Shown one piece after another: positions 8,441 through 36,200 of a stretch of DNA of 64,000 nt (the first letter of the stretch is position 1; each line of letters opens with the position of its first letter). Below the pieces are notes generated by a model that was not told where the DNA came from, made no database searches, and saw nothing but the letters and a program-made list of their open reading frames with translations. Origin of the DNA: Botryllus schlosseri (Eukaryota); the NCBI GenBank assembly GCA_051294905.1, contig CM119372.1, positions 23,498,001 to 23,562,000 of the forward strand. Direction: 5' to 3'. A program made the position numbers and the translations under genes.

Positions 8441-9257
8441 GAACCGAGGAGATTGTAAGTAAACTGATACATTCTTGCGCAAGTGCGCATTAATCACAAT
8501 TTCATATTCCGCTTCAAGGTCAAGGCTAATATGAATCTGACTGACTGTCAGAAATGAACCTAAATAACTCGGCGAATTACCAGACTCGTACCAGCAAGTC
8601 AAAGCCACCCGAGGACGCCAAGTCACCCCCTTAACAGTAGTGTTACCGTATTTTGGAATCGGGAAGGGAGGATACTTTGTACCAATCATAGAAGCCATAT
8701 ACCGAAAATATAATGCAGCTGATTTTATAATTATTACTGCAAACCTTGTAGTGTTGACTACAAAAAAGGCCATCGAATGACCGCATTACGTATTTATGGC
8801 GATTTCTGGTTGAGCCTGTCCATTAGCCTAGCCGTCAAAACTGGACGAATTTTCTAATAGGACATATGGTAACCCTACCTGACAGGCCTAAATTACCACT
8901 AATCCAAACGTCTGCTATATAACTACGTAGTATAATCGTTTAGTGTTCAGTAGCACAGTCGGAAAACGCTGTCATCCATTTCAAACAACAATGTGACAAA
9001 AAAACGAACCCAAAATTCTGACATGCAAAAGGTTTATTCAATTTTCTACGAACACGTTGAGAAAAAGTGACACTAGTATCAACTCCAAGTAAAATAATCT
9101 TAGTGACGGCTCGGTGTAGACTTGGCGGCAGGAGTCTCCAACCTTCATCCGTGTCAAGAGCTATAGCGATGCCGATAAGGTCTAAAAATTCATCAATACC
9201 TTGAAGAAAAAGTAATTGTACTTGTACTGAAGCTGAGATGCTCACCACACAAATTCG

Positions 9258-15200: not shown

Positions 15201-17631
15201 ATGAAGTCAAGGAATGAAACTTAACGCCTCTGTCGACAAATATAGCAACACAGATATGAGAACGTCTTAAAAAGAGACACACATACTCGATGAGAAATAG
15301 ACTACAGAATTGGACGAAGAGGGGTGTTTCAGGATGGGGTAGATGGGTAAGCTGAGAGCGCAGTGGATATTTGCTCGAAACATCATCGAAAATATATACA
15401 AATATCCAAAGTTTCCTACCTCTTCTCATACTCCATGGACACGTTGCACGTGAGAATGTAGGCATTTTCAACTCTCTTCTTCATGTCGGGATGTCGCGCT
15501 CCGTGGTCCATGACCAGGCCTCTGACAAGTTTCGTGTCGGAGTCTACTCTGTGCTGCATTTCCATTATCTCGACCATGTGAAGGTTAATAGGTTCGTTTT
15601 CTTTCTTTACTGCCAACACGGCGTCGACAACAACCTGTGACATTTACATAATTCATTAAAATCTTTCAAAATATTTCCATTCTCCTTCCGCCATGCCCAT
15701 GCCACAGAGGATCAATGATCCGAATTATGGTTTGACTAAAGTTCTTATGCCAGAGGCCTGTTCTGCAGCAACCCTACCAGTTTTCACAGGCTTTAAACCT
15801 GTACTGGAATGGAATTTGCTTGCTGTTTATAGGGGTAGATTTGAACGCAAGCCACCAGATTGCCAGGTTTTCTCTCTAGCCGCTCAGCTACAGTGGCTGC
15901 TATGGAATCCATTGAAATAAGAGACGGAATGGTGTAGTGAATTTGACGAGTGGAAATTTACACTGCTAATTATTTAATCTCTGTCAGCTAACCGATTAAT
16001 TTACTGAGCTTGTACATGACGGGTAATACTGACTTGGGAAAATTTCTTCTGGTAACAGTATGTTGCCTTCGGAAGAGACTAATCGATACCAATTCCAAAA
16101 CTAAAAGCACAGTGACATCGTGTAATGGAGTGACGCTTTAGATATAAACGGGTGAGAAACAATGTCGTATTCCTGTACTAGATGCATTGACCACACAAGT
16201 CATAAGTCCAGCTGGCAGTGACTGGTCTACAATATAATTTATGGGCCTAGATATCATCAAAGGTTTCAAGTTCAAGGAGTGAAATTATGAACGAAAGAAT
16301 ACCAGTTTTAACAAGTCAGAATAAAAACAGTACGACATCTAGCCACCAAATACCTCGGTCAACTTTTCAGCAAGCTGATGATGAACTTTTGTGGCCAGGG
16401 AAGTGCGCGCAACGTTAATCAGCTCATCACGGGTCATTTCCTTCATGATTTTCAAAGAATCGAGAATCTCTTCTGCCTTCTTTTTAGCGAGTTCAAAACC
16501 CTCCGTGATAATTCGCGGATGGACACCCTGCCGAAATTCATTGTCAAATATAGCGGCGCAGAGTAACGAACATTGAAGCTACCTCGTTGACGTATAAATC
16601 AGCTTGTTTCAAGAGCTCGCCGATGATGAGCACGTTCGAAGTTGTTCCGTCTCCTGTGATATCATCTTGCGCAGTCGCGACCTGTAAGGTTCACAACTAA
16701 TTTAACATTTTCAAATGAAAAATAAAAAAGTTTCACCTTCCAGCACCACTTATCACAAAGTTGTAAAGCCCTGGGTCTGAGTGGAATTGGTCATTGGTGG
16801 CAACGTCAGGCTTATTTTTCTGTGTAATTACTTGATTATCCAATGCAAAAGAAACCCTTCTGTCATGCGCCACTTATTGCCACAGGGATCAACCTTTTTG
16901 ACAAGGTGGCCAGCCCAGATAGAGATAATGTGGCAAGACTGCGACCCGGCAATAGGTGTTCTAGTAGTTTCAAAGCTCAATGTCTCTTAAATATGTTCAC
17001 GGCGATGGCAAGGATTATATAATAGCCTACTACTCATTACTATGATTTTTACCTGTAATTGACAGCACGGAAAAATGATAAAGTTATTGGATTACAGTAA
17101 TTTTTATCAGTCCGCATCCACATGTTAAAGTGATATTAGTTTTTATCTATTTGTCTTAGTCTACTTGAGCTTGGGTATAAAATCTACTTGAGCTTGGGTA
17201 TAAAATATATAAGGCTATAAAAGGAAAATTGGAAACCATTTGAGATAGGTGAGTTGCACACCCCTACGCCATAAAATTACACCAGATAAACTTCCTATAG
17301 GCTATAAAGGTTGGAAGTTAGAATGATTGTCAAACCTTCGCAATCAAACTAGCGGTCGGATGTTGTATCTGCATTTCGTTCAATAGTACGTTTCCGTCTT
17401 TTGTAAGTTTGATATCACCAGCTCCTGATACAAGCCTGAAAATTATGGGATATGAAATTGAATCAAGTACGGTAATGGAATACTTCGTCCTCACATCTTC
17501 ATAGTTCCTTTCGGTCCAAGGTTTGTTCGTAATACATCTTGAAGACCTTTTGCAGCATTGATATTAATCGCTAGGGCTTGCGTAGATCGGGCAACCTCTG
17601 CCTTTGGATTGAGAGATTTGATAGCCGCCAT
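9258..17631 (-). CDS. CCT6: T-complex protein 1 subunit zeta (CCT6), 14 coding exons, 538 aa
   Basis: Exons 17495-17631, 17336-17435, 16583-16681, 16354-16527, 15420-15634, 14961-15075, 14838-14891, 13657-13727, 13486-13594, 13277-13424, 13112-13212, 9997-10138, 9399-9471, 9258-9336 sum to 1617 nt in one frame. Motifs [47 protein letters not shown]. Confidence 0.97.
10832..13067. mobile_element. hAT-type MITE (CAGAGGTGGTCA family) in CCT6 intron 11
   Basis: TIR CTGAGGTGGTCA / TGACCACCTCTG; perfect 8-bp TSD AACATAAC at 10824-10831 and 13068-13075; AGTAGAAGTAG subterminal repeats. Confidence 0.9.
11135..12438. mobile_element. hAT-type MITE nested in the 10832-13067 element
   Basis: TIR CAGTGATTCCCAAAC / GTTTGGGAACCACTG; perfect TSD ATGTAAAT. 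Confidence 0.92.
13819..13963 (-). ncRNA. Candidate intronic H/ACA snoRNA (CCT6 intron 7)
   Basis: 145 nt with hairpin - AAAACA (H box, 13884-13889) - hairpin - ACA(N3) layout. The 5' hairpin carries UCGGAAUU and CCGGA, complementary to 18S UCUGG-U-U-AAUUCCGA. Folded by eye only. Confidence 0.4.
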
Positions 17632-18085
17632 TTTTCCAACTGTTAATCAAGTAATTCTGCAAACTATAAGTTGAAGTTCATGAAATCACTGAAAGTTGGT
17701 GCGTATAGTATAGACTTCATTCAACTAGATACATTCAACACCAGTTTACAAAAGCGAAACTATCAAATTTACTGAACTAGGATTCTGCTGTGCTAAGCTC
17801 CCGTGACAAAAGTATTGGTCACGCCTATACTGTACATGTACAGCTGTTAACTTGTCCGGCACAAATAAATGCTATCATTCCATTCAACAATCTAAGGCGA
17901 TGGTAGACTTGTTATTTACTGAATAATTGAACATAACAGTAAATATAGACACATAATTTTCGAGTATTCCGGATAACTACATGAATTAGAACGAATCTAG
18001 ATTCAGCTTCAACAAAAACATGTGCCGTTATCGCTTGACTTCATAACCAACGGCCCACGCTCTACGGTTCGGTGAACATGGAAGT

Positions 18086-18100
18086 TTTCCAGAACATTCG
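18086..18100. promoter_or_regulatory. Heat-shock element upstream of CCT6
   Basis: tTTCc-aGAAc-aTTCg, three perfect alternating nGAAn units about 455 bp upstream of the ATG. Confidence 0.55.
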
Positions 18101-18399
18101 TTTTCATTGATCAATAAGGCAATCCACTGGTAGTTTATTATGAATATGTACCATGGAATCAAATCAACATAGTACCGATGAAAAATCATTCTCAAGACAT
18201 TAGTGACATTGGAAAATTTATTATTGATACCAAATTTGGGAATATGCCTTGCCTATTTTGATCCGCTCAAGGCAATTTAGAATACGGTCCCGGCAAGACG
18301 GTGTAATGAACAGATAAATTCGGGTTACCACATGCCCTCCGTTACGAGTATTTGTCCTCCTTTTTCAGGAAATTGGAAATGTCCTCCAAGGACGCCTAA

Positions 18400-18643
18400 A
18401 TGTGTGGAACAGTATCCCGCCGGCCATCCGACAGTCGACGAGCATGTCCACATTCAAGTCGAAATACAAGCAATTACTATTAAATAAATACAGTCCATCC
18501 TCAAGATTACCGGACCACGAATGACCTATCGATCTCGCTTCCCATGACATGCCGCCCTATTCTTGTCGCTTTCTATTTCTATACTGTCTTCTTTACTTTC
18601 ATTCAGTGTGCATGTGCATGCCTCCTCTTTACATCGCCTAGTC
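18400..18643 (+). mobile_element. CR1/L2-type LINE 3' end
   Basis: Translates [26 protein letters not shown], then the shared 3' UTR. Confidence 0.8.
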
Positions 18644-20165
18644 CAGTGGTTCCCAACGTGGGCGATATCGGCCCCAGGGGGCGATTTGGCGGTCTAGGGA
18701 GCGAAAATAACGAAGGGGGCGATAGGGGGCGAAAACGGACGAAGGGGGCGATAGGGGGCGAAAACGGACGAAGGGGGCGATAGGGGGCGATGACGCGTTA
18801 AAACGGCTATATTGGATTCAGGACCGTAATTGCCTCACCCCAAACCCCCAATTGGGGGTGGAGGGCCCGAACTCGAAGGAGGCCCAAAATTATTTCTTGA
18901 ATTAACATAAATTACAGAGTAATTTTTTTGAAATTCATGCAACATTTACAAAAATTTTTCGCGCTGGGCGCGATAGAATATGGCCATATATTTTGATTTT
19001 GGGGTAGGCTACCCGTCACCAAACAAAAATAGACGCATAATTTATGGGAATGGAAGAATTCGGCGTCGGCCGTTACTGCACCACGACGCACCAAGACATA
19101 TGAAGTTATGATGAGCCATGTAACATGCGACTCCGAGAAGTGTGCCTTAACGATCAGCAGCGAGAAGACCTTGGCCGAAAAGGAACGCTCTTGTGATGAC
19201 CGAAAACTTCGGTATATATATATATATAAATGTTTAATCGTCCACATAGACGCTTCAATGGCTGGCGTCGAATGTTCCTGTCCTGGCGACCTGAGCCCTA
19301 CAGGTCAAATGCCATCCCGCAGGGAAAAAATTATTTGCCAGTAAAGAAATACCAATTTGAAATCATGCGTGTCTATTAGTTTGGTACGTTTTGGCGATTT
19401 CCGTATCTTGTGACATAGCAGATATAGGAGGTCACGAAATAGCATCATGTAACGAAGTCAATATATCAACGATTCCGGCCGAAGATGTTTAATTAATATT
19501 TAGGGGTCCTACCTTTTCCAACATTCCTCACTCAGCTCTACCGGTAAATCTGAATACGTGAGCAGAGAGAGGATAAAAAATTGATACCAATATATAGGCC
19601 TATGCAATTCCCGACCAAATATTGACCGATTCAAACATGAATTATATAAATTTCTAGCGCTTCGCGCGTTTAGGCGACGTACGGTGACTCACCAAACAGT
19701 ACATGAAATAGGGTATGTATGTAGGCTATAAGGGGTTTTATGGTGCTCGACTACTAAGGTCTTGTGCACCATGCAGGCCCGGGTGAGCTAATAGTTGAAT
19801 GAAATAGGGTATAGCTGATGATATGTAGCGACAAACAGCCCACTGACTGAGGGGGGTCTGGGGTTTGGTTTTGCACCCTGTGGGGCCAAAGACCAATGTT
19901 TTTTTTGGGGGGGGGGCTGACGAAGTGCTGTTACGGTGATGATTAGAGTCAAGTCGGAGTAATGACCTTTTTTAGTCAACTCACGAAAATTTAGCTGTAA
20001 AAGTGTAATTTCGAGGTCGAGCCGAAAAGTTAGCCTTTTTTTATTGGTCAACTCGCCGGTGATCCCAGTTTATATGCCCATTTTCGGTTCTCAATATTTG
20101 GGGGGCGATGATCCATGTGGAGCTTCAAAAGGGGGCGATGAGTCGAAAAAGGTTGGGAACCACTG
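18644..20165. mobile_element. hAT-type MITE with GGGGGCGA subterminal repeats
   Basis: TIR CAGTGGTTCCCAAC / GTTGGGAACCACTG; tandem GGGGGCGATAGGGGGCGAAAACGGACGAA units near 18715-18790. Flanks (GCCTAGTC / GTTTAAAC) do not form a TSD. Confidence 0.85.
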
Positions 20166-21268
20166 GTTTAAACGGTGGTCTGATAAAACAGGTCAAATGT
20201 TGAAAAAAAGTCAAAGTCCACTTTCCAGATAAGGAAACGTCATGGGCAGCTAGGTATAATAGGTTATTGCTAGATTGCGAAACAATAGTTTCAAACGTTA
20301 TGGGTGGCCGGCCATACTTACTGTGATGCAATATTTGGTATAGGCGACAATGCAGTGTGAACAGATGAACCACGCAACCCGGTATCTAAATGATATTCAG
20401 CGATACTTTCGTTAGAACATATTTGTCACTCCATATCTACTGTGAGCGAAGCGCAACGAAAATTCTGGGTATTACATGACTTTTATGAAAATTAAATGTT
20501 GGTACTACGCAGGGTTGTAATGACTCGAGTCATGACTCGACTCGAGTCAGACTCGAGTCACGATTTTCGGATGACTCGACTCGAGTCATTTTCTCAAAAT
20601 ACGGAATGACTCGACTCGATTCGAGTCAATCTGTGTATTGACTCGACTTGGACTGGAGTCATTGCGCATGACTCGAAGCAAGTCATTGACTCGAGAATCA
20701 GACGGCGAAGACCGACATTTCATTGTAATTTCGAAACCAACACACTATTGGGATTTCGTTTGTTGGTACTGGTGCTTGAAAATGAGACCAGAAACTGCTA
20801 AAAGTGAGGAAAATTGATATATTATGAATGCGAACCATTCAATATCACCAAACAGAGTTAAAAAAAAAAGTGGGTACAAGAAGACTTTAACAGGAAACTG
20901 AGCAGTCAACGAAATGACTTGGACTCGGACTCGAGTCATAATGCCATGACTCGGACTCGATGCTCTGTTCGCTGACTTGGACTCGGACTTGACTTGGTGG
21001 GAATTGAAAATGACTCGACTTGACTCGAGTCAAAAAGATAAAAGTGAGATTGACTTGTGACTCGGAGCCTTGTGACTTGCCCAGCAAACACCTGACGTCC
21101 AGTTGACTTCCGGTGGAATAGCAGGCCGGACATCCGGTTACTTCCTGCCGTTACCTCCCTGGATTGGATTTGTCGACAACTAGAGACGTCCTGTCCACTC
21201 TCTGAGTACGTCCGCAATGACGTGTTGTGGACATGAAGCGACTCCTCATGGACTCGTCTGACCTAGCC

Positions 21269-21457
21269 TGGACGTCACGTGGTTCCCTATGGACGCGCCT
21301 GACGTACTGTGGACGTCACGTGGTTCACTAATGGACGCGCCTGACGTACTGTGGACATGGTGCCACTCCCTACTGACACGCCTCACGTACTGTGGACATG
21401 GCGCCACTCCCTACTGACACGCCTCACGTACTGTGGACATGACGTCACTCCCTATGG
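21269..21457. repeat. Subterminal tandem array of 41-42 bp units (about 4.6 copies)
   Basis: Units start at 21269, 21310, 21352, 21393 and 21434 (TGGAC...CACGTACTG). Confidence 0.9.
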
Positions 21458-24400
21458 AAGTGTCATTCACCCTCTTTCTCATCTCCACTCCATACCTGGT
21501 TCAACGCCTCACGGCTAACAACATGGGATACAACATCATATCAGCTCACACACAGCGTATATTGGCTGAGCGAGCAACGAAGCTATACTACTCACACACA
21601 GCGTATATTGGGTGAGTGGGTAACGAAACTGGCTAAATACAAATATGATATTGGTTATTATCAACGAAGCTATGCTACTATTAACGAAACACAAAATGTG
21701 AAAGGCGAGAACTGCTACCACTGAAGTGAAAAATCATATTGCAACAAGTAATCATAGAAAATGTGTCACAGGGGTTTACCAAACAGCAGCTGCTAAAATC
21801 ACTCAATGCTTTTTTACTTTGACTGTTTGTCATTAGTTTAAGTACATAAAAAGGTGTCGTAGGAATATAAGACACTGCAACTGCTAGGACAACTCAAAGC
21901 TAATGGAACAGTCCACGTGAAAAAAACATTGATTATATGGAAGAATGGTATCACAGGAATAAAGAAACAGCAACAATTTGAAACGAGCATGACAAAACGG
22001 GTTCAGTAAAAATTCACAATGCAAGAATTAAATCAAAGCACCGTTTGCTGATGTTGAGTTCCTATTCTTTTTCTTCGGCAATCGCAAGTGGTTGCACCAA
22101 AACGTTTCTTCTTGGCGCTTGTGCCTGAAATACATACAGATTGTCAGTGAATTCTTTACGTTGCCTACTTCCCCCCGAAGTAGTTAAACAACGCCTTGGA
22201 AAGCGCTACTTACACTTCACTACAGATTCACGTTACTTAGATGTCTACTTGAGAACTAACTACTCCTGTTCGACGAAGACTACTATTTCAACTACTCGAG
22301 TACTTATCAACTTATATTTCTACTTCCACTTGAAATAATTGACATACCTTGAAAATCGCTACTTCTACTTCAATAGAAATTTATGATGTTACTTCTTACT
22401 TCAGCTTGAGCACTAAAAACAACCACTTCTACTTCGGCTACACATGTTCGAACCATTACATGGTAAAAGAATGAAACATTACAACCAAATCTACTATTTT
22501 CAAACTACTCGAGTACCTTTCAACTTCAATATATACTGGAGTATGCTGTGATTTACGAAGTATGTTAAAACTACTCCAAGTTACTTCTCCTTCCACTATA
22601 GTCCCAACGCTGAATACTTCTATTTGATAATCGCCACTTACAGTTATATGCTAAAATCAACCGACACCTCGACCAAGTTTACGACATCACACTAACTGCT
22701 TCCTTGAGGTCGGTTTAACATGTCTTGTAAACCACTATATATACTTCAATAGAAATGATGTATTACTTGAGCAGTACTGACTACTTCTACTTCACTACCC
22801 AACCCGTGTTCGGAAGAAGCCACATTCCATTACATCAGGGGTTTCAAACATACAGACTGCCTAGCAATTCTGCGTAGATTGAACAATGCGTGTATTATGC
22901 AGCACTTTTCTAATGTTTGAAATTTTCACAAGAAATAATTCCATTAAATAATCCTTTAACACTGCAAATGTCCAGTACGGAAAAAATTGAATATTGTGTT
23001 CCGAGTTCTATGGAAAAATTCCCTAAAACAGAAGCAAAAACGCCAATACGGAACTGCTACGTGCAAGTTACATGGTGAATACGATAGTTTCACAAAAATA
23101 TAATTACAATATCTGTGGTCGCACTAGTGCATCACAAAAGACTCCAATGGTTTCCGGCCTGAGGGAAACCAGAATCGCTTTTTAAGACGATTAGAAAATT
23201 CCAACGTCCGCATTTACATTTAAATACTTTGTTTACATCAACGCATACCCAGGTTTACCACCATGTTCGAGTAAAACATCGGTAGCATAGAAAAATACCG
23301 ACTTGCATCATATTAGAAGAGATACTGTTTCATTGATTTTCAACTGTATTCTGCCGCCTAATCACCATATTATTGACAATTTCGTTGTTTGCTAATATAG
23401 GTGCAACTAGAATAGAACCCATATGATCCGAAATATAATTCATCTATTACACTACTGTGTTGAAAGGCCTGATAGAAAAGTTTCAAATGAAAGGCCATTG
23501 CACGGATTTTCAGGTGATAGTTTGGAATACTCCATTGATGGACCCTGCGAGCGATCTAAAGCTTTCGAGTCCGGCCTGCGACATCAGGCGAGTTTGTCGC
23601 CACTGCGTTACATATTTAATGAATGCGATATTACGCCCAAATCGACTTTCATTAAACTACAGAGTACTTGCACTTGAAATAGGTATGGCATACCCTGTAA
23701 ATCGCTACTCATACTTTCAGTACAGTTTTGATATACAGTCGACTCTACTTTATTCACAGTGTGGTTCCGCCCACTTTGGCCGAATTAACCACATAATCGG
23801 CGCTGTTCGCATTAACCGGCCAGAGTATTTTAAATGCAATTTTATTTCTCTCCTGTACAAGCATTTTTGGCCGAATAAAGCGGTTATACGGTCTCAGAAT
23901 TCAGCGGACTCGACTTTACTTTGTAAATTGCTACTTATGCTTGGGAGGGAATCTATGACATTACTTCTACTTGGGTACCAACACCGACTACTTTGACCCC
24001 TCCCGGTTTCATATGAGCTCAACTGATCGATACCTTCAATTGCTGCTTTTTGACTTTTTCCGGGGCATGACGTAACAAAGAATTCACTGCTTCCTCGTAG
24101 TCCACTTGTGTTGCAGATGAATGGACTTTGCAGCAGGCAGCGGAGAAGTGATTACCTTTTCATTGATTTGCGGATTAGTTTGGTATATGGCGTACATGGA
24201 TTACAAGAAATAATACATCATAGCATCGCAATGCCAGAATACACAGTACAGATTGCATAATGGTTGGGAACAATTATATATGCTCAAAGAAAGCGACACC
24301 AAGACCAGATCTACTTCTTTGAACGACTTACTTGACTAATTTTCAAGTTCATTTTCTATTTCCACTTGGAGTAGTCTTATCATGTCTTGTAAATCGATAC

Positions 24401-24521
24401 ATATACACAATATATTTATGATGTCACCTCTACTTCTACTTGGGTAACAACACTACTTGGATAACATGTACTTGGAAACAGTAATTTACAATTACATGCT
24501 ATGATAATGCAACACCTAGAT

Positions 24522-25366
24522 CAACGGTGGCCAAACTTTTCAGCCAAAGGGCCACATGAGATTTACGAACCACTGCACGGGCCACTTTAATGTTGATGTC
24601 CTTTTTTTTAATCGTCCGATAGGAGCAAACAGGATTGGGTAATGGTAAAAATAGGACATATATTAATATTACTATGCATCAAATTCGATAACGAAAATGT
24701 CATGAAAACACTGTGTACAAGTCCTAGCTGGGCCAAGCGCGAAATTTTTTCAAAGTTAATGAATGAATTCGGGCAATAATAATGTTGCATATATTGTGGG
24801 TCGCCTCTGTATACAGCTTGGCTCAATTGACCAGGACATGAATAATCACGGCTTGTATATATATCAATATCGAAGATTTCAGTGGACGTCTGTCGATCAT
24901 TTTGCGCAAAGGTTTCATCAACGACTATCTTTCTGCGAGTGCAGGCGCGAAGTCGCATGTAGGACAACACGTTCTCACATAATTGCGAATATAGTTAGGC
25001 TCAATTCTGTAGAATGGGCGCATATTTAATTTTCATGAGAGGGAAACAATACTAGAAATCGAGTGACAATAAATCGCGTGAAGTGTCAAGAAAAATATCA
25101 AGTCAAATAAATCTGCGACGAAATATTCGACTTCATGTTCATACACGAAAATGTGGATGGTCCTTGCCTCCGTCAATGAGTCGGAACGTATATTTTCGTC
25201 ATCAACATCATAAAGCTCGCGGTCAGGCTAATCACATTTACGGTTGATCTTGCAAGCTCACTATAAGTTACCTGCCTATTTGATTTATTGATACAACAAC
25301 CAATTTCGAAAATTAACTCACGTGACACTGAAAACCTTCTCGCGAGCCACGGGTTGGCCACTTCTG
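24522..25366. mobile_element. hAT-type MITE nested in the CACTA-like element
   Basis: TIR CAACGGTGGCCAA / TTGGCCACTTCTG; TSD ACCTAGAT / ACGTAGAC (6 of 8). Confidence 0.75.
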
Positions 25367-25610
25367 ACGTAGACCAAATCTACTCTATCAAACAAATTAC
25401 TTGAGTTCTTTCAACTCTATTTCTGCTTGTACTAAAAGCAGTTTTTACATGCCTCAGAGATCTCTACGTACACGTGATTAGAAATTTGATGTTTCGCTTG
25501 GGTTATAATTTTATTTCCACTTGTAGTTTTAACATTGCTTGTAAACTGCTGCGTACGCTGGAGCAGAAATTTAGGATGTTGCTTCTAGTGCTACTGGAGT
25601 ACCAATGCTA

Positions 25611-25873
25611 ATATCGTCGCAGTGGAATCAAAGTATCTTATGTCCAGTCTTCAAATTTTGAAGCTCCCTTTTTCAAACTTGAAAAAAATCGACTTTTCGA
25701 AAATTTTTGTATTTCTTTCCGTCATAGCTTAGCCATGGTTATATCTGTCTCAGTGTATCAAAGTTAATCGGGGCCAATATATGGCTGAAAGAAGATGAAA
25801 ACTTCACTCAAAGTTAATTTTCCCAAAATGTGTAAAATGGACATAAGATACTTTGCTTCCACTGCGACGATAT
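25611..25873. mobile_element. Small MITE with about 36-bp TIRs, nested in the CACTA-like element
   Basis: ATATCGTCGCAGTGGAATCAAAGTATCTTATGTCCA / TGGACATAAGATACTTTGCTTCCACTGCGACGATAT; TA-type ends. Confidence 0.8.
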
Positions 25874-28559
25874 ACTTTTACCTTGACTATACCTATATTC
25901 GGAAATGGTCACTTACGATTATACTTTAAGAATTCCACAATTCGGGCTAATCCACTTCTTGATACTCATGCAATTTTGAGAACTTGATTCTCTACTTCTA
26001 CTTGAACACTCGGTCAGTACTGCTACTTTAACTTGAGCAGGAATGTATGCCGCTATGACTGATTGAGTACCAACCAAAAATTCTTACACCATCTTTGGTT
26101 TTTTCAAATTGTATCCAAGTTATTTATGTTACCTTCGTTTGCTCTCCAACTTTGATACCGGGGCATGGCGCAACACTTGACATTGTTGATGAATGGATTT
26201 CGCATCCGGTGCCTGAGAATAGCTTCTGATTTTGAACATTGATTTTCGGATATGATAGGTAGGATTACCATGCAACTCACAGAAAATGATATCATACAGG
26301 CACCACTTGGTCCGTGCTCTTTTCTATCGAGTTGAAGCCCATGCTGTGGTTTAGTACTTCATTATGTTGACGGTACACTGCGCACTCTATAATGCATTCT
26401 TCGTACAGTCTGCTTGACGTGTTCATCACCAATGGTAGACATTGCTGATATCTAGGAAATTGAAATAATCAGAATGGTTGTATTAAAGGCATCTGACAGC
26501 ACGTGAAACAAAAACAAACCGATGCGGGTGCAAGCATGCTGCTAATAGTACATTTACACACTAACCAGTTATCAGGTTATTGTTGGCGAGAATATTGGCT
26601 ACCGTACTGCGAATCACCCGGAATATGATTACATCATCAATGGTAATTCGATAGTTCATCCTGATAGCTGCGATTTGCTGGGCAATATAGGCCAAACCGC
26701 GGCTCTGAGTTGAGGGTTTGATTGAGGCACATGCATTTCCTTACCTTGCAGAGGGGTTCAACCCAATTTTAAAACAATGCCTTCCATCACGTTCAAACAA
26801 TATGCTTGTATATCACATCAGTTACCTTGCCGTTGACGATACTGGACAATTTACACGGGTGCGGCTATATATACAGGGTGAATTTGGCCACGGCAAGAGC
26901 GTTTCATGTACGACAAAGGTGCATAGTCATCAACAATGAACTTGATAATAATCAATCATGGTATCCTATCAAAGTATATAACTTAATTGCACTTGTTCAG
27001 ACTCAATTACTCATAGAGATTGTATATAAGATATACTATTCAGTAAATGTACTCATTTTATAAGGTTTTCGAAGGAAAAGTCAGCAGAATACTTACAAGT
27101 TCAACAGGAGTTGTAAATTGGGAATAATCCACAATGGCGGCAACCAGTCTCAAGCGCAACCGAACTAGTATAATTCATAGAGTTAGCCAGTGATCAAGCA
27201 ATATATAATTGCCTCATTACATAAATTACTATATGACCTAGCAAATACACAAGATATTTTTATCACTATCTTGAGGAACATTCAAGTCTATCGACCAGCA
27301 AAGCATTGCTATTGGAATGAATCAGCAAATCGGTATCTATGGCGTTTCAATCATATTACAGCGTATTCACACTTCACAGTATGGCGTATCTGTATTCGAA
27401 GAAGGCGTAGCAAACAATTAATGTTCTGTTCTACCATATATCGATATTGAACACAAACTATCGACGAAAAAGGAGAAGCTAAATTACGCTCACAAGAAAT
27501 GTATACGGTAAACCGTATAGTAAGGTCTATTTACGCCACGCATCATTGTAAAAATTAGAACTCTTACCAATTCAAACTGTTTCTCTGCTGGAGCGGTTCA
27601 GGTATAGTTTCTGAATCAACAACACTAACAACAGACAGCAAGTCTTCTGTTTTGCTTCGTACAGCTTCTCAATCTAATCAATGACTATGTTTTGTCTGCG
27701 TCCATTATCTCTAAGAAACTCGTCGCATCAGTCGCACAGACATCAACTCAGATTCAAATCAAATGCCAGATGCACGCGTCGTCGCGCTGCACTGCGCAGG
27801 TAACACGTGACGGAGAAGGAAGAAGGCTGTCTGGTTTGAAGATGTCTGTCTGGTTTTCATGATAGGGCCGCGATTGTAGAGACGTGCCGTGTGCTACGAA
27901 TAGTCATGGCGTATCATCCTTAGTGAATCACGTTGTGATGCCGCCACGTGCATCACAATTTCACATTGATGCGCACATTTGTTCCTGTATTTCGCTATAT
28001 CGGGATACATATTCAGAACACGTATTTCGCCATGATGTGCACAATTGTGCAGTTGTGCACGCTTATGGGTCCAGCTATACGCCTCTTTATTGTTCAGCTT
28101 ATTAACAATCTCATCGAATCAATACAACGCAGGATTGTGATATATTTTCATAAAACCAGTACACTGATAAATGGCTATAAGCCTATATGTCTTACGATTT
28201 CGTCCGCGATGTGTGCAACCCACATGGGGAAGAATAATGATAATATGTCATTTTCAACAAGCCAGCTGGACCCCATGAAAGCGATATCCAAGTAGGGGTA
28301 TCCTGATGAACTCCTATGTACGTCGCATCCAGGTGACATACTACTATGACATCCTCTGGAATATTCATTGGTGACGGGAATAGGAATATTCCAAAAATTT
28401 CTTCCACTGGAAGTCATCTGGAGTTACATAACTGGACGTCCAGTTTGTGACAAACTGAGCAAGTCCTCAGTAACTAACCGTGGGAGGTGGGACGAGTTGG
28501 AACAATTGTGGACATACCAGTAAATCCATGGGATATCGGGTGTTTGCTGGGTTGGTTAC

Positions 28560-29499: not shown

Positions 29500-29522
29500 T
29501 TGGTTACAACCCTGGTACTACG

Positions 29523-29747
29523 TGAAAACAGCCCCGAAATTCCTTAGGCTATCTTTCTTATTGGGGGATTAAATAACTTCTACTTGACAAACTGAAAATA
29601 GCGAAAAGTAAGTAAGTAGTTCACAAAATATTGCGAAGTAGAAGTAGAAGTAGCGAAAAAATATATACTTGAGTAAGCACCAGAAGTAGAGGAAAACTAC
29701 TTGAGTATTTCGAAAAAGTAGAAGTACTTCGTTACTGACCACCTCTG
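29523..29747. mobile_element. 3' half of a CAGAGGTGGTCA-family MITE
   Basis: Closely matches 12855-13067 and ends TGACCACCTCTG; the 5' TIR was not found. Confidence 0.8.
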
Positions 29748-30010
29748 GTTGCGACTTATGATTCGTCAGTGGGTTGCGGCCCGGATTTGAGCCTTGCGGG
29801 TCTGACCAGTCAAATGAATACAAATTTAAATAGTCTCATTCGATACAATTCTAACGTCGAGAATCTAGCAGTGTTCTATTGCGTCGTTGACGGCGGATTA
29901 CCCACCACCATAATTACCCCTGGAACTCGTCCCACCCGAAGTTATATTTTGTATATGCAGCGTAACAGGTGGCAGTCATAGCCTAGGTCTTCCTACCGAA
30001 GTGTTGGAAG

Positions 30011-30195
30011 CAATGCTCCCTCTAAGCAGCGCACGTGCGCAAATGCGCAGTATACTGACACGGTCTTTGCGCACAGAAAATCCAAGTTGCGCACAAAGAA
30101 TCCGAAGTGAAGGACCTCTTTTTTAGTCGTTACGCACTGTTGTCCAAGGGTCTGCGCAGTGTCCTCAGACTAGTCAAATATTAGAGGGAACATTT
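30011..30195. mobile_element. Short MITE (CAATGTTCCCTCTAA family)
   Basis: TIR CAATGCTCCCTCTAA / TTAGAGGGAACATTT; perfect TSD GTTGGAAG. Confidence 0.9.
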
Positions 30196-30733
30196 GTTGG
30201 AAGTTTATCTTGGCTGCCCCCGCCATCTCATTCGTGAAAGCGGTGTCTTATAAAAGCCTAGAAGTCGGCAGCTACAGATAAAATTGAAGAAAATAGGCCT
30301 GGTGTAAATGACCATACCAGTCGACAGACACTATGAATAACAGAAACACCTTAGACTTGGTCTTTGGCCCTTTTATCATAATGAATATGTCAGAATATGT
30401 AGAAACTAAGCAGGCGAGATGATAATCTGGTGCCACACCATTGCTGCTGCTAAATGAATCGCTTCTTGAAAGTAGAAAGTATCCAACAAAATTTCCACCA
30501 CGTGATCTACTTGGTTCATGATGCTTAAAAGTACATTTCTACTTCTGGAACCAAATTATTATAACCCGTTAGCACAGGGGCGGGCAACATACGGCCCGCG
30601 AAGGGATTTTGTCCGGCCCGCGGACAGTTTTCCTTCTTACATGATAATGGGCCCGCGGTCCCCGTCTGCCGAGATTCCCCACTACTTGCTTACTACGTCA
30701 AATTGTAGTGACTATATGCTATTATTAGACCGA

Positions 30734-31839
30734 GCGAGATGGTGTAATGGTTATGCGTCCGGCTTCTCGAGCGGTAGGTCGTGGGTTCGATCCTCGGCCG
30801 GGTCATACCAAAGACTCGAAAATTGGTATCCGCAGCTATCCTGCTAGGCGCTCAGCAATCACGGATAGCATGGAGGAAAAAGGAAAGGACGTAGTTTTAT
30901 TTTTGTCCTTGATGTTTTCGCGGCATATACACTGTGACGGTGAGGCTGTGTCGTGCCTGGAGCAGTAGATAGCTGACTTGGCGACTGGCTGGCTGTCTTT
31001 AGGTTGGCGACTTCTTAACTCACAGTTTCACTCGGTACGGATGTATTGCAGCAGAGATACGTTAGGCGCTGAGGTGAATCTCAGATCTCAAGGGACGTCA
31101 CAGAGAAACGTGGGTTTATATACCCGGAAATGCGTAACAATGAATGCGATTGTAATGCGTTAGCCAATGAGAACGGGTTGGTAAAGTTCTAGTGACAGGA
31201 AAAAGACAGTACTCTAGCTAGGACTATGTTTGGCGTAACAATGCTTACAAAGCTTGCGCAACACTAGCAGAGATAGTAGAGTTCTACAAGTTGTCATGAT
31301 ATACTAAAATCCTAATACACGCAAAGTATATTTCCTTCATAACGGATGCCTGGCGTTAGCTAGGGACATCGGGTTAAAAGGACCAGCGGTTCGCTACAAC
31401 ACCGACTCATGATATACATACACACGATCAGCGCATATGCATACCATGAGTGCAGGATTTGCATATGCCGCTGGACAAGGAAGTGCAGATATAGCCTTTA
31501 CGACTTTCTAAGTCATGCACCACCCCTCCATGCTATCCCAGTAATGCATGAGCGCCAAGCAGGGAAGCCATGGATACCAGTGTTACTAATCAGGTCTTTG
31601 GTCTGACCCGGCCGGGAATCGAACCCACGACCTACCGATCAAGAAGCCGGACGCTTAACCATTACGCTATCTTGAGGAGGAGAGAAGGAGGAGAAAGAGA
31701 GGAGGAGAAAAAAACGGGAGGAGAAAAAAAGGAGGAGAAAAAAAACGGGGGCGCAGACTAGATGACCTCATGGGGCCGTATCGCAACTCCGTCGTCAAAG
31801 CATCTCGATGGTGCAGGCGAAAAAGAATATCATATCTCT
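30734..31839 (+). mobile_element. tRNA-derived SINE, interrupted by an antisense related SINE
   Basis: A box GGTGTAATGG, B box GGTTCGATCC, core GGTCATACCAAAGAC...CCTGCTAGGCGCTCAGCA (resembles my recollection of the MetaSINE domain). Tail at 31745-31839 matches the uninterrupted copy at 48430-48687. Confidence 0.8.
30889..31672 (-). mobile_element. Longer related tRNA-derived SINE in antisense orientation
   Basis: Head at 31530-31672 is a diverged reverse complement of 30734-30875; part of its body recurs at about 55410-55470. Left boundary approximate. Confidence 0.65.
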
Positions 31840-32889
31840 ACACCTGTATAGTGTATAGTAATACGCACGCGCGGCGTTGCGAGACTGGAGCTTACGCGTA
31901 AGTTCCTCGAAGCGAGGAGAAAGAAGACTTGCATTATCGGCATTTACGATGCACTCAACCCTAATGTCGTCTGTGCTAATCATGATTTCTGTCAACTACA
32001 ATGGTCATTTACACCAGGCTGATATTTCTTATATTTGATTCTGCAACCGCCGACTTGTAGCACGGCACACTTCTAGGCTTTTGTAAGGCACGGCTTATAC
32101 CAGGAGTCGCCAACACAAAACGGGTCGCAGGCCACTTTTCAAATTTCGTATATAGAGGACGCGGGCCGCATGAATTCAGTATCGAGATTAGTTACGCCAC
32201 ACAGTTGAATAAACGACCTACTCAACTGGTAAACTTGGTAGACCACGGGTACCGGGCTTATCGAACGCCTTGAAATCTTAATTAGGGATTGCACCGTGTG
32301 TTGATTGATCAGAGAGCAGCAGACATGGCGGCGACAATTTTATTCTCAAATTCACATTGTCTTCGCCATTATCGTCGAAAAATGGCTTTGATGTGACATT
32401 GCTGACGTTAAAATACATTCATTAAATACGATTTATTCCTCGTATATGTGGATAAATGTGCGAACAATGTATCGATTCAGCAATCCAGCCCGCCAAGTAC
32501 TTAATTTTCCTATATCCGGCCCGCCGACAGGAGAAGTTGCCCGCCCCTGCGTTAGCATTAGCGCATAGCAATTTACAACGTTTACAACGTTGCAACGTTG
32601 TAAATTGCTATGATTAGCGTGTCACATGTCATCAGAGAATTTGCTCTTAAATTTGCTCTCTTCATTAGTTATCGACTGTGAAAATTGCTCCTGTCCCGGG
32701 TGGCTCGGCTCTGAAGACTATGTCATATCGAGCCTCCCGTCTACCTTGCATGTCACATTTCACTGTTACATTTGTGTAGTGTTATGTTGATATGTAACGT
32801 ATACGAATAAAGATTCTCTCTCTCTCTCTCAAAACACTTTGTACTTGCAAAACGGTGCCATATGATGGTGCCATTGCGCCATTCCGAAT

Positions 32890-32902
32890 GTTGCTAGGAT
32901 AC
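32890..32902. promoter_or_regulatory. RFX X-box at the probable AGBL2 promoter / non-coding first exon
   Basis: GTTGCTAGGATAC, 74 bp upstream of a strong donor (AAG/GTGAGT, 32976/32977) that precedes the first coding exon. Confidence 0.55.
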
Positions 32903-33220
32903 AACCAAGCATGCTGCAACGAGTAGATCGCATCAAAATAACGACGCTATGCGACACCTGCGTCTCTGTCAATAAGGTGAGTTCGCTACTCTTTCAATAC
33001 TCTTGAACATACTAGATAAATTTATAGCTAGGGTTAGAGATGCCGCCATTTGATCTGAGTGCTCTTGCAATGACTGATAAACTGATAAGATAATGCCAAG
33101 CAGAAACCGTCTCAGCGCTGCATGTAAATTATGAATACTTCATTTCAGGTCTCGTTATGTTTAACACCTGAAGTTGTATACACGTGATTATGGTTTAGAA
33201 GATATACCTCAAGAAACAAA

Positions 33221-36200
33221 ATGGCTCAAAACGCAGTGATGGAAACTGGCTCTCCCAGGAGGACTGAGGAGATTGGCAACGAATTTCTTCAAGCCGTAGA
33301 TGTTGAAGATACGGAAAATGTCCTGTTAGAAATTGATAACAAAAGCGAATTGGATAATCAGGTAATTCTTTGGTAGTAATGATAGAGTAGATTCTAATTA
33401 TGAGTCATGTCTCGTAATATATCTTTTTTATTCAATGTAGTTAAAAAGATATTTGGTTTACAGCTATAATTATATGACCAAACGAAAGGATGACATAGTC
33501 TGAAGGTGCCCTAATTAGTAAAAATGCAGTCGAGCCACTGCAAAACTACAACATAACGTACTCCGTATCATAGCTAGGGGTCCAAAGGGGCCTGGATGTC
33601 CATCCAACAAGTCTCTGCTGAAGAGATTCGGTGTCATAAACATAGAAGATATGCGGAAATTCGAAATCGCCAAGTTTATGTATCAGTTCCACTGCGGTCA
33701 TTGCCCCGAATATTTCGATGACTTCAAAAGCGCACAAGTACAACACAACCGCGTCCACGTCATCCAAATATCATATGATCGACTGAAAAGATCATCGCTC
33801 TATCAAATGGCGAACCAGATGTGTGGAACAGTATCCCACCGGCCATCCGACAGTCGACGAGCATGTCCACATTCAAGTCGAAATACAAGCAATTACTACT
33901 AAATAAATATTAGTCCATCCTCAAGATTACCGGACCACGACCTGACCTATCAATCTCACCTTCCATGACATGCCACCCAATTTTTTGTCGCTTTCTCTTT
34001 TCTATACTAACTTCTTTTACTTTTCATTCTGTGTGCATGCCTCCTCTTTACATCGCATAGGCCAAGGTGGATGTCTGATTCTATAGACTACTCCAAGTCG
34101 CTTCGACACCTTCCTGTCTTTTCATTGTATCGCATTTTTGTGGTGTATTGAACTGATAAAAATTGCTAATTAACCAATGATGAAGTTCTCTATGTTATTA
34201 TAACCAACAATATCATTTTTGTTGACAAAATATAATTTTTATGTAACATTTGATTGCAGATCCAGTTTAGCGAGTTGTAGAAAATGATATGGCAGCATGT
34301 AGTTCCTACTGTGATCTTCAACCTGAGGAATTTTCCTAAGTTGAAAAAAAAATTGTAAATCATACCTTGCATATATGGAAACCCACAGGCCCGGGTTGTG
34401 CAAACCTTGTGAGAAAAGAAGTAATGACTTCATTTTTTGTTACGAGAATTCTTTAAATTGAAATTAAAATCTGAAACATGTTTCCAATGAATATAGGATA
34501 GGCCCTATGTACGTTAACTAAAATTCTCAGGCATCCATTTTACATTTTTTGTTTCCCAGGCATCCCCAGCTTTTCAATAAATTCATTGAAGCTTTGACGT
34601 TGTTCATCGCTCTCTGTCCGCAATCATTGTTTTTGCTTGACAATCAGACTTGATTTAACCACCAGACAGCATAATTTCTTTACACATGTATCAGTGATAT
34701 TATTGAGATAACGAATATTTCACCTAAAAGTAATTTTCATATACATTGCCCAAATACACATCATCAATCAGGTTTCTTAATATTTTCATTGTTTCAAAAC
34801 ATCACAAGACTGCGATACAATGAAAAGATAGGAAGGTGTCGAAACAACTTGGAGTAGCCTTTAAGATCATACACCCACCTTAGCCTAGGCGAAGAAAATA
34901 AGAGGCATGCACATCGAATGAAAAGTAATGCAGAGAATATAAGACACAAGCGACAAAATGAGGTGGCATATGTGGGGAGGGCGAGGCCGATGTTAGGTTG
35001 TGGTCCGGTAATCCTGAAGACTGGCTGTTATTCATTTAGAAGAAATTGCTTGTATTTCGACTTGAATGCGGACAAGCTCGACGACTGTCGGATAGCTGGC
35101 GAGATGCTGCTCCACAATTGGGGTCTGGCATACTTGTATTCAGTCCTGATGATATGGTAGTTGTTCTTCGTTGACGCGCGTGTGCTGTACACATCTATAT
35201 TAGTAGCCTATTACGATCAATACCACTTATTGAATCATTGTTGAGACAGGACACAGGTAGAGGGAGCTAAACTCTGATTTATTTGAATTGATGAACAGCA
35301 ATTGATTTCCAACAATATCCGACAGACAATGTAAGTAAGCATTTTAGCCATAACATACACATTTAAGGCGTGATGTCAGGTTAGCGTTAGAAGGCTAGCA
35401 ATTGCTGTCCCACAATTCAAGATTTTAAAATTTCTATTTCGTTTAGCTATTGAACTCAGACAGCTTAGTTATATCGCAAGATATCGATCTAACTAATACT
35501 GCAGTCACCCTGCCTTGGTCAAGTATGAGTATTTCATAATCTTGTGATGAAAAATTAATTACATCACCGTGTAGAACAGATTCTGGAAGCATCTGCAGTC
35601 AGAGGATGAATGGTGTGAAACCTTGCAGGCTAGCAGTGTTGAGAAGATGAAAGATGTGAGTAGACACGCTCTACTTCATGAGGATGAGTAGAAATAAACG
35701 AGTCGGGTTATTGTGAAAAACCAAATTGTTTCATTGAGAAGATATGAATATATTGATAAGAATAATTGATTACTGAATTATTTTTGATCTAACACTATAT
35801 GAGGCCCAAGTTGGGATGTTCAAGACTTGTTCATAGTTTGGCAACATCGAATTTGGCAATATTTCTTCATTTGCAGAAACATTGAAATTCAAATTTTTCA
35901 GTGTTAGGTTAGTTAATATTTCCATACCCACTTAGTCTTCAGAAGGGTACATCCTCAACAAAAGATATTGTAGCCGCACAATTTGCGGATTTGAAATGAA
36001 GTAGGAATTCAGTTAGAAGAGCGTGTTACAGATATGTGTTACAGAGAAGGTATAACAAGTTTTAAGACAATATATATAATTCCTAGATTGGATCAAAGTG
36101 TTTTACTTTATTGTATTTAATGTCAGTCAAAATCCTTCTAGCATTGATAAGGAAAATATAGGCACTACCGCAATATAATTGCTTCACATTTTATCAATGT

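What the first reader, a model, noticed from the sequence alone, without database searches (positions are those of the whole stretch)
21080..28551. 7.5-kb CACTA/EnSpm-like element carrying an intron-containing gene relic
What looks like ordinary intergenic DNA between CCT6 and AGBL2 is bounded by perfect 13-bp CCCAG TIRs, a 3-bp TSD and a subterminal tandem array, the hallmarks of the CMC/CACTA superfamily (CMCWR termini, 2-3 bp TSD). I recognised no transposase. Instead the interior holds splice-flanked segments, a promoter-like GC-richer patch with CACGTG motifs near 27780-27950, and two further MITEs. It is a candidate uncharacterised non-autonomous or cargo-carrying family.
Basis: partly seen in the sequence, partly recalled or inferred. 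Interest (0 to 1): 0.75.

Follow-up and report, generated by a model that had tools for sequence, protein, structure and literature searches.

The report
Transposase-less DNA transposon with spliced relic
This 7.5-kb stretch is a real but defective copy of a cut-and-paste jumping gene found about 170 times in this animal genome; it has no transposase of its own but keeps a promoter and small spliced exons that its sister copies still transcribe, so it is a fairly ordinary non-autonomous transposon of a family whose superfamily is not settled.

Summary
Window 21080-28551 is bounded by perfect 13-bp inverted termini (CCCAG...CTGGG) and a TTG duplication, which three paralogous empty sites confirm as a true 3-bp TSD.

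The 21-nt terminus occurs 339 times in the genome and 0 times in the reversed control. Twenty fetched copies are collinear with the whole interior. Nineteen of 21 copies have a 2-bp TSD and two have 3 bp.

No copy and no majority consensus has an ORF over 235 aa. Pfam scans of 191 ORFs from four copies found nothing. The element is non-autonomous.

RNA-seq shows GT-AG splicing on the minus strand: exon 1 (~27850-27571), exon 2 (26451-26281), exon 3 (26212-26133), an alternative exon (24151-24033) and exon 4 (22124 leftwards). Nearly all reads come from sister copies. The exons carry stops in all A and B copies and diverge as fast as the introns, so this is a family-wide relic, not cargo of this copy.

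A third, young, expressed lineage (about 39 copies, 6.4-10.4 kb) may include the autonomous partner. I could not fetch it.

CMC/EnSpm membership is unproven: the TSD fits, the termini do not, and no transposase is linked. Earlier notes of this scan describe other EnSpm-like elements in this genome, not this family.

The parts
21077..21079 (.). Left copy of the 3-bp target-site duplication (TTG)
   Evidence: empty-site paralogues (window 51813-51900, window 46380-46520 reverse complement, L031) carry one cTTGgtta
21080..21100 (+). Left terminal inverted repeat: 13 bp perfect (21080-21092), about 21 bp imperfect
21226..21458 (.). Subterminal tandem array (41/83-bp period) rich in TGGACGTC / GTGGACAT motifs. 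21310-21351 is an extra unit specific to this copy
22031..22124 (-). Exon 4 (last exon seen). The acceptor AG is at 22126-22125. The 3' end lies left of 22050 and was not mapped
   Evidence: joints 22123->26133 and 22123->24033
22125..26132 (-). 4.0-kb intron with dispersed ~42-130-bp internal repeats. 23435-24737 is present only in lineage A
24033..24151 (-). Alternative exon used in a few reads (GT..AG on the minus strand)
   Evidence: joints 22123->24033 and 24151->26129, 3 reads each
25611..25873 (.). Nested MITE with 50-nt inverted arms, absent from all 20 other copies
   Evidence: (I1)
26133..26212 (-). Exon 3 (80 nt), donor GTAACA
26213..26280 (-). 68-nt GT-AG intron
   Evidence: 16 reads in X17, 8 in X21, 2 in X20
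26281..26451 (-). Exon 2. ATG at 26442, then tandem stops TAA TGA after 26 codons, shared by A and B copies
26452..27570 (-). Intron 1 (1.1 kb here). The exon 2-to-right-TIR interval is 1.6 or 3.2 kb longer in lineage C
   Evidence: joint 26452->27571
27571..27850 (-). Exon 1 (non-coding), donor GTAAGA at 27570. The upstream limit is approximate because read depth stops near 27850
27780..27950 (-). GC-richer, CpG-rich patch with CACGTG at 27804 and 27945. Inferred promoter/TSS region; its lower part overlaps the 5' end of exon 1
   Evidence: read depth starts here
28430..28520 (.). Right subterminal motifs: palindromic CTGGACGTCCAG at 28433-28444 and GTGGACAT at 28508-28515
28531..28551 (-). 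Right terminal inverted repeat (13 bp perfect at 28539-28551)
28552..28554 (.). Right copy of the TSD (TTG)
20510..21079 (.). Host repeat 'MITE-X' (GACTCGAGTCA-rich, TIR CAGGGTTGTAA). The element inserted about 5 bp from its end. A second MITE-X starts at 28560

Best explanation
Window 21080-28551 is an old, non-autonomous copy of a multicopy cut-and-paste DNA transposon family. Its nearest relatives differ from it by about 6%. The family has roughly 170 TIR-bounded elements in at least three lineages, here called A, B and C.

The copy cannot move by itself. It keeps the cis parts needed for mobilisation in trans: a terminus of about 21 bp beginning CCCAG, and subterminal arrays of a TGGACRT-type motif. 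Insertion makes a staggered cut of 2 bp, occasionally 3 bp; in this copy it was 3 bp (TTG), inside another repeat.

The interior is the family's own decayed transcription unit on the minus strand. A CpG-rich promoter patch lies about 0.7 kb inside the right end. It is followed by a non-coding exon 1, a 1.1-kb intron, exon 2 with an ATG, a 68-nt intron, exon 3, a 4-kb intron with one optional exon, and exon 4 about 1 kb from the left end.

Sister copies are still transcribed and correctly spliced. The reading frame is closed by stops in every A and B copy, and the exons drift as fast as the introns, so the unit is a relic here.

Inferred, not shown: the family belongs to or near the CMC (EnSpm/Mirage/Chapaev) group. 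The autonomous source would be a longer C-lineage element of about 9.5-10.4 kb, with about 3 kb of extra DNA between exon 2 and the right TIR. That would be an En/Spm-like layout.
For: Termini and copy number:
- TIRs are exact.
- The terminus has 339 genome hits against 0 in the control.
- BLAST found at least 40 left ends and 40 right ends.

Family structure:
- Twenty full copies are collinear over the whole 7.5 kb.
- Mismatch divergence is 1-2% within the A core, 2-3% within B, 6% from the window copy to A, and 11% between A and B.

TSD:
- 19 of 21 copies have matching 2-bp flanks of eight different sequences; 2 of 21 have 3 bp.
- Empty sites prove TTG here.

No coding capacity:
- No ORF over 235 aa in any copy. 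The two longest (235 and 140 aa, in L022) belong to a nested Penelope-like fragment.
- Consensus ORFs are at most 132 aa.
- Pfam found nothing in 76 + 115 ORFs of four copies, nor exon by exon.

Splicing:
- RNA joints with GT..AG on the minus strand appear in three of four runs from two studies.
- Splice sites are conserved in the aligned copies.
- Only 6 of 546 laid X17 reads are at least 99% alike, and loose-end sequences match A/B copies exactly.
- Stops are shared by all A/B copies.
- Exons diverge 10-11% against 8-11% for introns, while the last 120 bp diverge 2.5%.

Subterminal motif: enriched at both ends and nearly absent inside.

Lineage C:
- Its marker has 39 hits, 30 of them exact.
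- 14 of the 15 hits on C1-C4 lie inside TIR pairs.
- Recurrent exon 2-to-right-TIR distances are 3.7-3.9 kb and 5.3-5.4 kb, against 2.17 kb here.
Against: - No transposase has been tied to this family. Transposase_21 gave no hit, though the tool warns this search is uninformative. DUF4218 gave one hit, elsewhere.
- The termini do not begin CAC or CA as in CMC lineages.
- I hold no lineage C sequence, so the idea that it contains the autonomous element rests only on coordinates and on 30-nt read ends.
- The open start of the C-type frame (29 codons) is not significant by itself: chance of no stop is about 0.25.
- The RNA libraries look unstranded, so the strand is inferred from splice motifs.
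- Part of the exon 1 read depth in run X21 comes from another repeat family.
Confidence: 0.72

Rival explanations
1. Pack-type capture. The exons are a fragment of a host gene picked up by a non-autonomous transposon and then amplified with it, as in Pack-MULEs or gene-carrying CACTA elements.
For: Short exons with canonical splice sites and no usable ORF. No transposase similarity anywhere in the element.
Against: - The unit has its own promoter patch and first exon close to one TIR and its last exon close to the other, spanning the element. Captured fragments are usually internal pieces.
- It is shared by lineages A and B and, in diverged form, by C.
- 14 of the 15 checkable genome hits of the diverged exon 2 lie inside TIR pairs, so no free-standing parent gene was seen.
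Confidence: 0.12
2. The family is not CMC at all. It belongs to PHIS (ISL2EU/Harbinger-like, 0/2/3-bp TSD) or to an undescribed superfamily, and the resemblance to EnSpm is superficial.
For: - The termini CCCAG...CTGGG do not match the CAC/CA rule of CMC lineages (PMC4079192, PMC12730594).
- The TSD is mostly 2 bp and A/T-rich: TA x7, AA x3, TT x3, AT x2.
- PHIS relatives make 0, 2 or 3-bp TSDs (PMC12730594).
- The genome is full of DDE_Tnp_4 genes, with 891 candidates.
Against: - ISL2EU makes AT duplications at A|AT|T (PMC4482050). Here only 2 of 21 are AT, and eight different dinucleotides occur.
- None of the 150 best DDE_Tnp_4 hits falls inside any known element of the family.
- Variable 2-4-bp TSDs are described for CMC, and 2-or-3 bp for PlavakaB within the CMCT clade (PMC4482050, PMC12730594).
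Confidence: 0.3
3. The spliced unit is not a relic but a working product of the element: a non-coding RNA or a very small peptide that acts in the family's regulation. That would explain why promoter and splice sites persist.
For: Splice sites are kept in nearly all copies and transcripts are spliced correctly. Exon 1 and the promoter side are somewhat better conserved between A and B (5.9%) than the rest.
Against: - Copies within B differ by only 2-3%, so retention of splice sites needs no selection.
- Exons 2-4 diverge between A and B as fast as the introns.
- No Rfam family matches.
Confidence: 0.12
4. The element is autonomous, and its transposase is hidden in many small exons.
For: The family does use small exons of 80-170 nt.
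Against: - RNA-supported exons add up to under 0.8 kb.
- There is no Pfam signal in any ORF of 45 aa or more from four copies.
- The consensus has no long ORF.
- Frames are closed in all copies.
Confidence: 0.03

Closest known systems
Non-autonomous CMC (EnSpm/CACTA-Mirage-Chapaev) elements, e.g. maize dSpm/I and animal EnSpm-N families
   Same: Short TIRs plus subterminal repeat arrays. Small TSD in the 2-4-bp range. Large internally defective derivatives mobilised in trans. A transcription unit with a non-coding first exon and a large first intron that runs across the element.
   Different: Termini are CCCAG...CTGGG instead of CACTA/CAC...GTG. The TSD is 2 bp in 90% of copies. No CMC transposase has been linked to the family.
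PlavakaB (fungal lineage of the CMCT clade, PMC12730594)
   Same: One lineage makes either 2- or 3-bp TSDs, as seen here.
   Different: It is fungal, its termini are CATCA...TGATG, and its transposase is known.
ISL2EU / PHIS superfamily (PMC4482050)
   Same: 2-bp TSD and a preference for A/T-rich targets.
   Different: ISL2EU duplicates AT specifically at A|AT|T, whereas eight dinucleotides occur here. No DDE_Tnp_4 gene lies inside any mapped element.
EnSpm-like elements of this same genome with a spliced SAMD3-like second gene (earlier notes s1-249637, s1-274159)
   Same: Element size of about 10 kb. They have transposase-less derivatives. They carry a spliced, transcribed non-transposase gene, and the transposase is said to sit in that gene's first intron.
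   Different: No SAM_2 hit falls in this family's elements. I found no sequence link.
Pack-MULE / gene-fragment-carrying CACTA elements
   Same: A transposase-less element containing spliced exon-like segments.
   Different: Here the exons are common to diverged lineages, have their own terminal promoter, and no parent gene was found outside elements.

Membership tests
CMC superfamily (CACTA/EnSpm, Mirage, Chapaev) | Target-site duplication of 2-4 bp | tested here: met
   19 of 21 copies have 2 bp and 2 of 21 have 3 bp. The 3-bp TTG of the window copy is confirmed by empty sites. The range is taken from PMC4482050.
CMC superfamily (CACTA/EnSpm, Mirage, Chapaev) | Termini 5'-CAC(TA/G)...GTG-3' (CA...TG in most CMCT lineages) | tested here: not met
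   All 21 copies begin CCCAG and end CTGGG. CAG starts only at the third base. The rule is taken from PMC4079192 and PMC12730594.
CMC superfamily (CACTA/EnSpm, Mirage, Chapaev) | [quoted passage not shown] | not testable with these tools
   No transposase in any held copy. PF02992 gave no hit, but the tool says this is uninformative. PF13960 gave one hit on another contig. The candidate autonomous copies could not be fetched.
CMC superfamily (CACTA/EnSpm, Mirage, Chapaev) | Subterminal repeated motifs (typical, not exclusive) | tested here: met
   41-bp tandem array at 21226-21458. The TGGACRT-type motif occurs 8 times at the left end, 2-3 times at the right end and about once in the 6.6-kb interior.
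PHIS superfamily (PIF/Harbinger, ISL2EU, Spy) | Group-specific TSD: TWA, AT at A|AT|T, or none | tested here: not met
   The TSDs are TA, AA, TT, AT, GT, CT, TG, AG, TTG and CCT.
PHIS superfamily (PIF/Harbinger, ISL2EU, Spy) | DDE_Tnp_4-type transposase inside full-length elements | tested here: inconclusive
   None of the 150 scored PF13359 hits lies in a mapped element of the family, but 891 candidates existed and only 150 were scored.
Tc1/mariner | TA target-site duplication | tested here: not met
   Only 7 of 21 are TA. The other 12 two-bp copies have perfectly matching non-TA flanks.
Pack-type (host gene fragment capture) | A parent gene outside the transposon family | tested here: inconclusive
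   14 of the 15 checkable hits of the diverged exon 2 marker lie inside TIR pairs. The rest of the 39 could not be checked.
MITE | Small size (under about 0.8 kb), no internal gene structure | tested here: not met
   The element is 7.5 kb and family members are 4.7-10 kb. A 2.1-kb TIR pair exists at C1:10900087-10902214.

The most novel reading that the evidence does not exclude
The CCCAG-terminated family is an undescribed animal lineage of cut-and-paste transposons, either a deep branch of the CMC group or something outside it. It would make 2- or 3-bp duplications and still be active. Its young C-lineage copies (30 of 39 identical over the marker, and transcribed) would express an En/Spm-style alternatively spliced unit, with the transposase lodged in the first intron of a second small gene.
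Probability: 0.2. Interest if true: 0.55.

Novelty: new member of a known kind. Interest (0 to 1): 0.3.

Why it matters
For annotation, this 7.5 kb should be masked as a transposon rather than read as intergenic regulatory DNA or as a gene. Its spliced RNA-seq signal would otherwise produce false lncRNA or gene models at about 40 loci.

For transposon biology, the family is a clean case of 2-versus-3-bp duplication within one family. It also shows a defective element that keeps a working promoter and splice sites. Sequence divergence of only 2-3% among B copies, and near-identity among C markers, says that a transposase source was active very recently. The listed C-lineage coordinates are therefore the place to look for a possibly live element and to settle the superfamily.

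Tried and rejected
1. Long-ORF search in 21 copies and in lineage consensuses found nothing. The two longest ORFs (L022) belong to a nested Penelope-like fragment with weak GIY-YIG matches.
2. Pfam on 76 ORFs of the window copy, on 115 ORFs of L039/L029/L026 and on the four exon pieces gave only noise.
3. Genome-wide family searches, used for coordinates only:
   - PF02992: none, and the tool flags this as uninformative.
   - PF13960: one hit, on C123.
   - PF07647: 23 hits, none in the family.
   - PF13359: 150 hits, none in the family.
4. An ancestral reading frame of about 112 codons across exons 2-4 was considered and dropped. The A/B consensus has three stops where about five are expected by chance, so it is not significant.
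5. The loose end before 27571 (agreement 0.54) gave no genome hit.
6. The X21 loose end belongs to another repeat family that occurs as inverted pairs.
7. Rfam and tRNA scans found nothing above threshold.
8. A sequence look-up in earlier findings was blank.
I did not try to read those letters by other means.
10. The spliced model was examined exon by exon, by reference. The joined transcript was not built or searched.
11. The large protein searches were not used. No stop-free piece longer than 31 aa of the supported exons exists to serve as a query.
Full report
**1. Observation**

The window carries CCCAGCAAACACC at 21080-21092 and its exact reverse complement at 28539-28551. Two matches in 64 kb are not beyond chance by themselves: 28 of 100 shuffles gave as many. 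The genome settles it. The 21-nt terminus pattern CCCAGCAAACACYCGAYRTCC, with at most 1 mismatch, occurs 164 + 175 times in the 496-Mb assembly and 0 times in the reversed control. BLAST of the first and last 400 bp each found at least 40 places, with 180-190 candidates.

I fetched twenty TIR-to-TIR copies. All begin CCCAG and end CTGGG exactly where the window copy does. All are collinear with the entire 7.5 kb.

**2. Target-site duplication**

- Nineteen of 21 copies have identical 2-bp flanks: TA x7, AA x3, TT x3, AT x2, GT, CT, TG and AG.
- The window copy (TTG) and L039 (CCT) match only as 3 bp.
- For the window copy the 3 bp are real. It sits about 5 bp from the end of another repeat, here called MITE-X, which is GACTCGAGTCA-rich with TIR CAGGGTTGTAA.
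- Three other MITE-X copies read a single cTTGgtta where the filled site reads cTTG[element]TTGgtta. These are window 51813-51900, window 46380-46520 on the other strand, and L031.

The family thus makes 2-bp and sometimes 3-bp duplications, without sequence specificity beyond a liking for A/T.

**3. Family structure and age**

By mismatches in a MAFFT alignment, the copies fall into two lineages:
- Lineage A: the window copy and L021-L026.
- Lineage B: L027-L040.

| Comparison | Divergence |
|---|---|
| Within B | 2-3% |
| Within the A core (L021/22/24/25) | 1-2% |
| Window copy to nearest A relatives | 6% |
| A to B | 11% |

Features private to the window copy are a 259-bp nested MITE (25610-25868 by alignment, arms 25611-25660 and 25824-25873), one extra unit of the 41-bp array (21310-21351) and a 46-bp tandem duplication (21570-21615). 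Segment 23435-24737 is present only in lineage A.

A 27-nt core of exon 3 has only 38 genome hits. A + B therefore number about 40 of the roughly 170 elements implied by the terminus count.

**4. No transposase**

- The longest open frame in the window copy is 185 aa, and it is not kept in other A copies.
- The two longest frames in any copy, 235 and 140 aa in L022, lie in a nested, inverted Penelope-like fragment with weak GIY-YIG matches.
- Majority consensuses of A, B and all copies, used only inside the script to look for frames, have no ORF above 132 aa.
- Pfam found nothing in 76 ORFs of at least 45 aa from the window copy, or in 115 ORFs of at least 52 aa from L039, L029 and L026.

**5. 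The spliced unit**

I laid four RNA-seq runs of the same species label on 22050-28049 at 88% likeness. Depth is confined to a few blocks. The joints read GT..AG on the minus strand:
- 26280..26213, a 68-nt intron: 16 reads in X17, 8 in X21, 2 in X20.
- 26132..22125: 17 reads in X17, in three near-identical forms.
- 27570..26452: 8 reads in X17, 2 in X19, 3 in X21.
- A rare alternative exon at 24151-24033.

The sequence shows matching signals. Exon 1 ends ...GAATTG|GTAAGA at 27571/27570. Exon 2 follows CCTAG| at 26451. Exon 3 is 26212-26133 with donor GTAACA. Exon 4 follows TTTCAG| at 22124.

The libraries look unstranded, so the strand rests on the splice motifs. Splice sites are kept in nearly all aligned copies.

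Almost all reads come from sister copies. Only 6 of 546 laid X17 reads are at least 99% alike, and 93% run on into unlike sequence. The read ends beyond exon borders match A/B copies exactly: the exon 2/3 and exon 3/4 junctions, and the exon 1/2 junction of B copies. This copy itself is close to silent.

**6. Relic, not gene**

From the ATG at 26442 the frame meets TAA TGA after 26 codons in essentially all A and B copies. Most copies have a further stop in exon 4. With three stops in 112 codons of the A/B consensus, against about five expected at random, I cannot claim an ancestral ORF.

Exon pieces give no Pfam match. Between the A and B consensuses, exons 2-4 differ by 10-11% and introns by 8-11%. 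The last 120 bp differ by 2.5%, the right 400 bp by 4.7% and exon 1 by 5.9%. Constraint is visible on the ends, as expected for cis sites, and not on the exons.

The spliced model was handled exon by exon, by reference. The joined transcript was not assembled or searched.

**7. A third, expressed lineage**

Many reads overlap only 26386-26420 and continue on both sides with sequence absent from every locus I hold. One of these 30-mers has 39 genome hits, 30 of them exact.
- Fourteen of the 15 hits on contigs C1-C4 lie inside TIR pairs, in the expected orientation.
- Five more lie 2.6-3.3 kb from left ends found.

This lineage C has a diverged exon 2 whose frame stays open for the 29 codons visible in reads, which is not significant alone.

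| Measure | Lineage C | Window copy |
|---|---|---|
| Element length | 6.4-10.4 kb, up to 17 kb with presumed nested insertions | 7.5 kb |
| Exon 2 marker to right TIR | 3.7-3.9 kb (six copies) or 5.3-5.4 kb (three copies) | 2.17 kb |

The extra 1.6 or 3.2 kb therefore lies on the exon 1/intron 1 side. That is where earlier notes of this scan place a transposase in other EnSpm-like elements of this genome. This is a lead, not a result.

**8. How it most likely works**

Shown:
- Defined ends with short TIRs.
- A TGGACRT-type motif repeated 8 times in the left 450 bp, 2-3 times in the right 450 bp and about once in the 6.6-kb interior.
- 2/3-bp duplications.
- Recent amplification of transposase-less copies.

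Inferred:
- A transposase made elsewhere binds the subterminal motifs and TIRs, cuts out the element and reinserts it with a 2-bp (rarely 3-bp) stagger.
- The internal promoter and splice sites are left over from the autonomous ancestor's transcription unit. They still fire in young copies.

**9. Comparison with known families**

- A TSD of 2-4 bp is described for CMC, and 2-or-3 bp for PlavakaB in the wider CMCT clade (PMC4482050, PMC12730594).
- CMC termini start CAC or CA (PMC4079192, PMC12730594), whereas these start CCCAG.
- ISL2EU makes AT at A|AT|T (PMC4482050), which does not fit.
- Tc1/mariner needs TA, which does not fit.
- Transposase_21 found nothing, and the tool warns this is uninformative. 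DUF4218 hit once on another contig. None of 150 DDE_Tnp_4 hits and none of 23 SAM_2 hits lies in a mapped element.

My reading is that the element works like a defective En/Spm-type element. Membership in CMC is about even odds and untested on its defining protein.

**10. Context**

The flanks contain Cpn60_TCP1 exons, consistent with a CCT subunit gene, and an LSM-domain ORF. I did not verify AGBL2.

**11. Verdict**

This is a real, ordinary non-autonomous DNA transposon copy. It has two mildly unusual traits, a mixed 2/3-bp TSD and a family-wide spliced relic that is still transcribed. Its superfamily assignment is unresolved.

Noticed in passing
window 20510-21079, 28560-~29460, 46380-46520, 51813-51900; also L031 and L037: A GACTCGAGTCA-rich repeat ('MITE-X') with termini CAGGGTTGTAA...TTACAACCCTG occurs several times in the window. 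Two copies abut at the insertion site of the studied element.
   Followed up: partly
window 25611-25873: Nested 263-bp MITE with 50-nt inverted arms. RNA reads with loose ends at 25611, 25663, 25758 and 25817 show that other copies of it are transcribed inside unrelated RNAs. It gives a weak sub-threshold miRNA-like Rfam hit.
   Followed up: partly
L022:2660-4121: A nested insertion in another copy of the family holds two opposed ORFs with weak GIY-YIG matches. It is probably an inverted Penelope-like fragment.
   Followed up: partly
genome, e.g. G000:C2:17101962/17111322 and C3:36053389/36058564: A 30-mer seen next to exon 1-like sequence in run X21 occurs 78 times, mostly as inverted pairs 4.5-15 kb apart. 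This is another long-TIR transposon family that shares about 80 nt with exon 1 of the studied family. One copy of the 30-mer lies 1.06 kb from the right TIR of a C-lineage element (C1:30865290).
   Followed up: no
genome, 50 sites listed: About 46 termini of the variant CCCAGCAAACACCCGATGTCC have no partner within the pattern search. They may be truncated elements or a further lineage whose other end differs.
   Followed up: no
G000:C123:20980-21138: The only DUF4218 hit in the genome sits in a 615-aa open frame. It is a candidate EnSpm-type transposase of another family.
   Followed up: no
genome-wide: Harbinger-type DDE_Tnp_4 genes are extremely abundant: 891 candidates, with dozens of full-length domain hits in open frames of 300-500 aa. 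This suggests recent activity.
   Followed up: no
G000:C33:164044-171035 and C21:365367-372358: Two copies on small contigs have the same length, the same scores and the same exon 3 deletion. They are probably one locus assembled twice (haplotig).
   Followed up: no
window 3600-20500 and 29500-45000: Five ORFs match Cpn60_TCP1 and one matches LSM. This is consistent with a CCT-subunit gene and an Sm-like gene near the element.
   Followed up: partly
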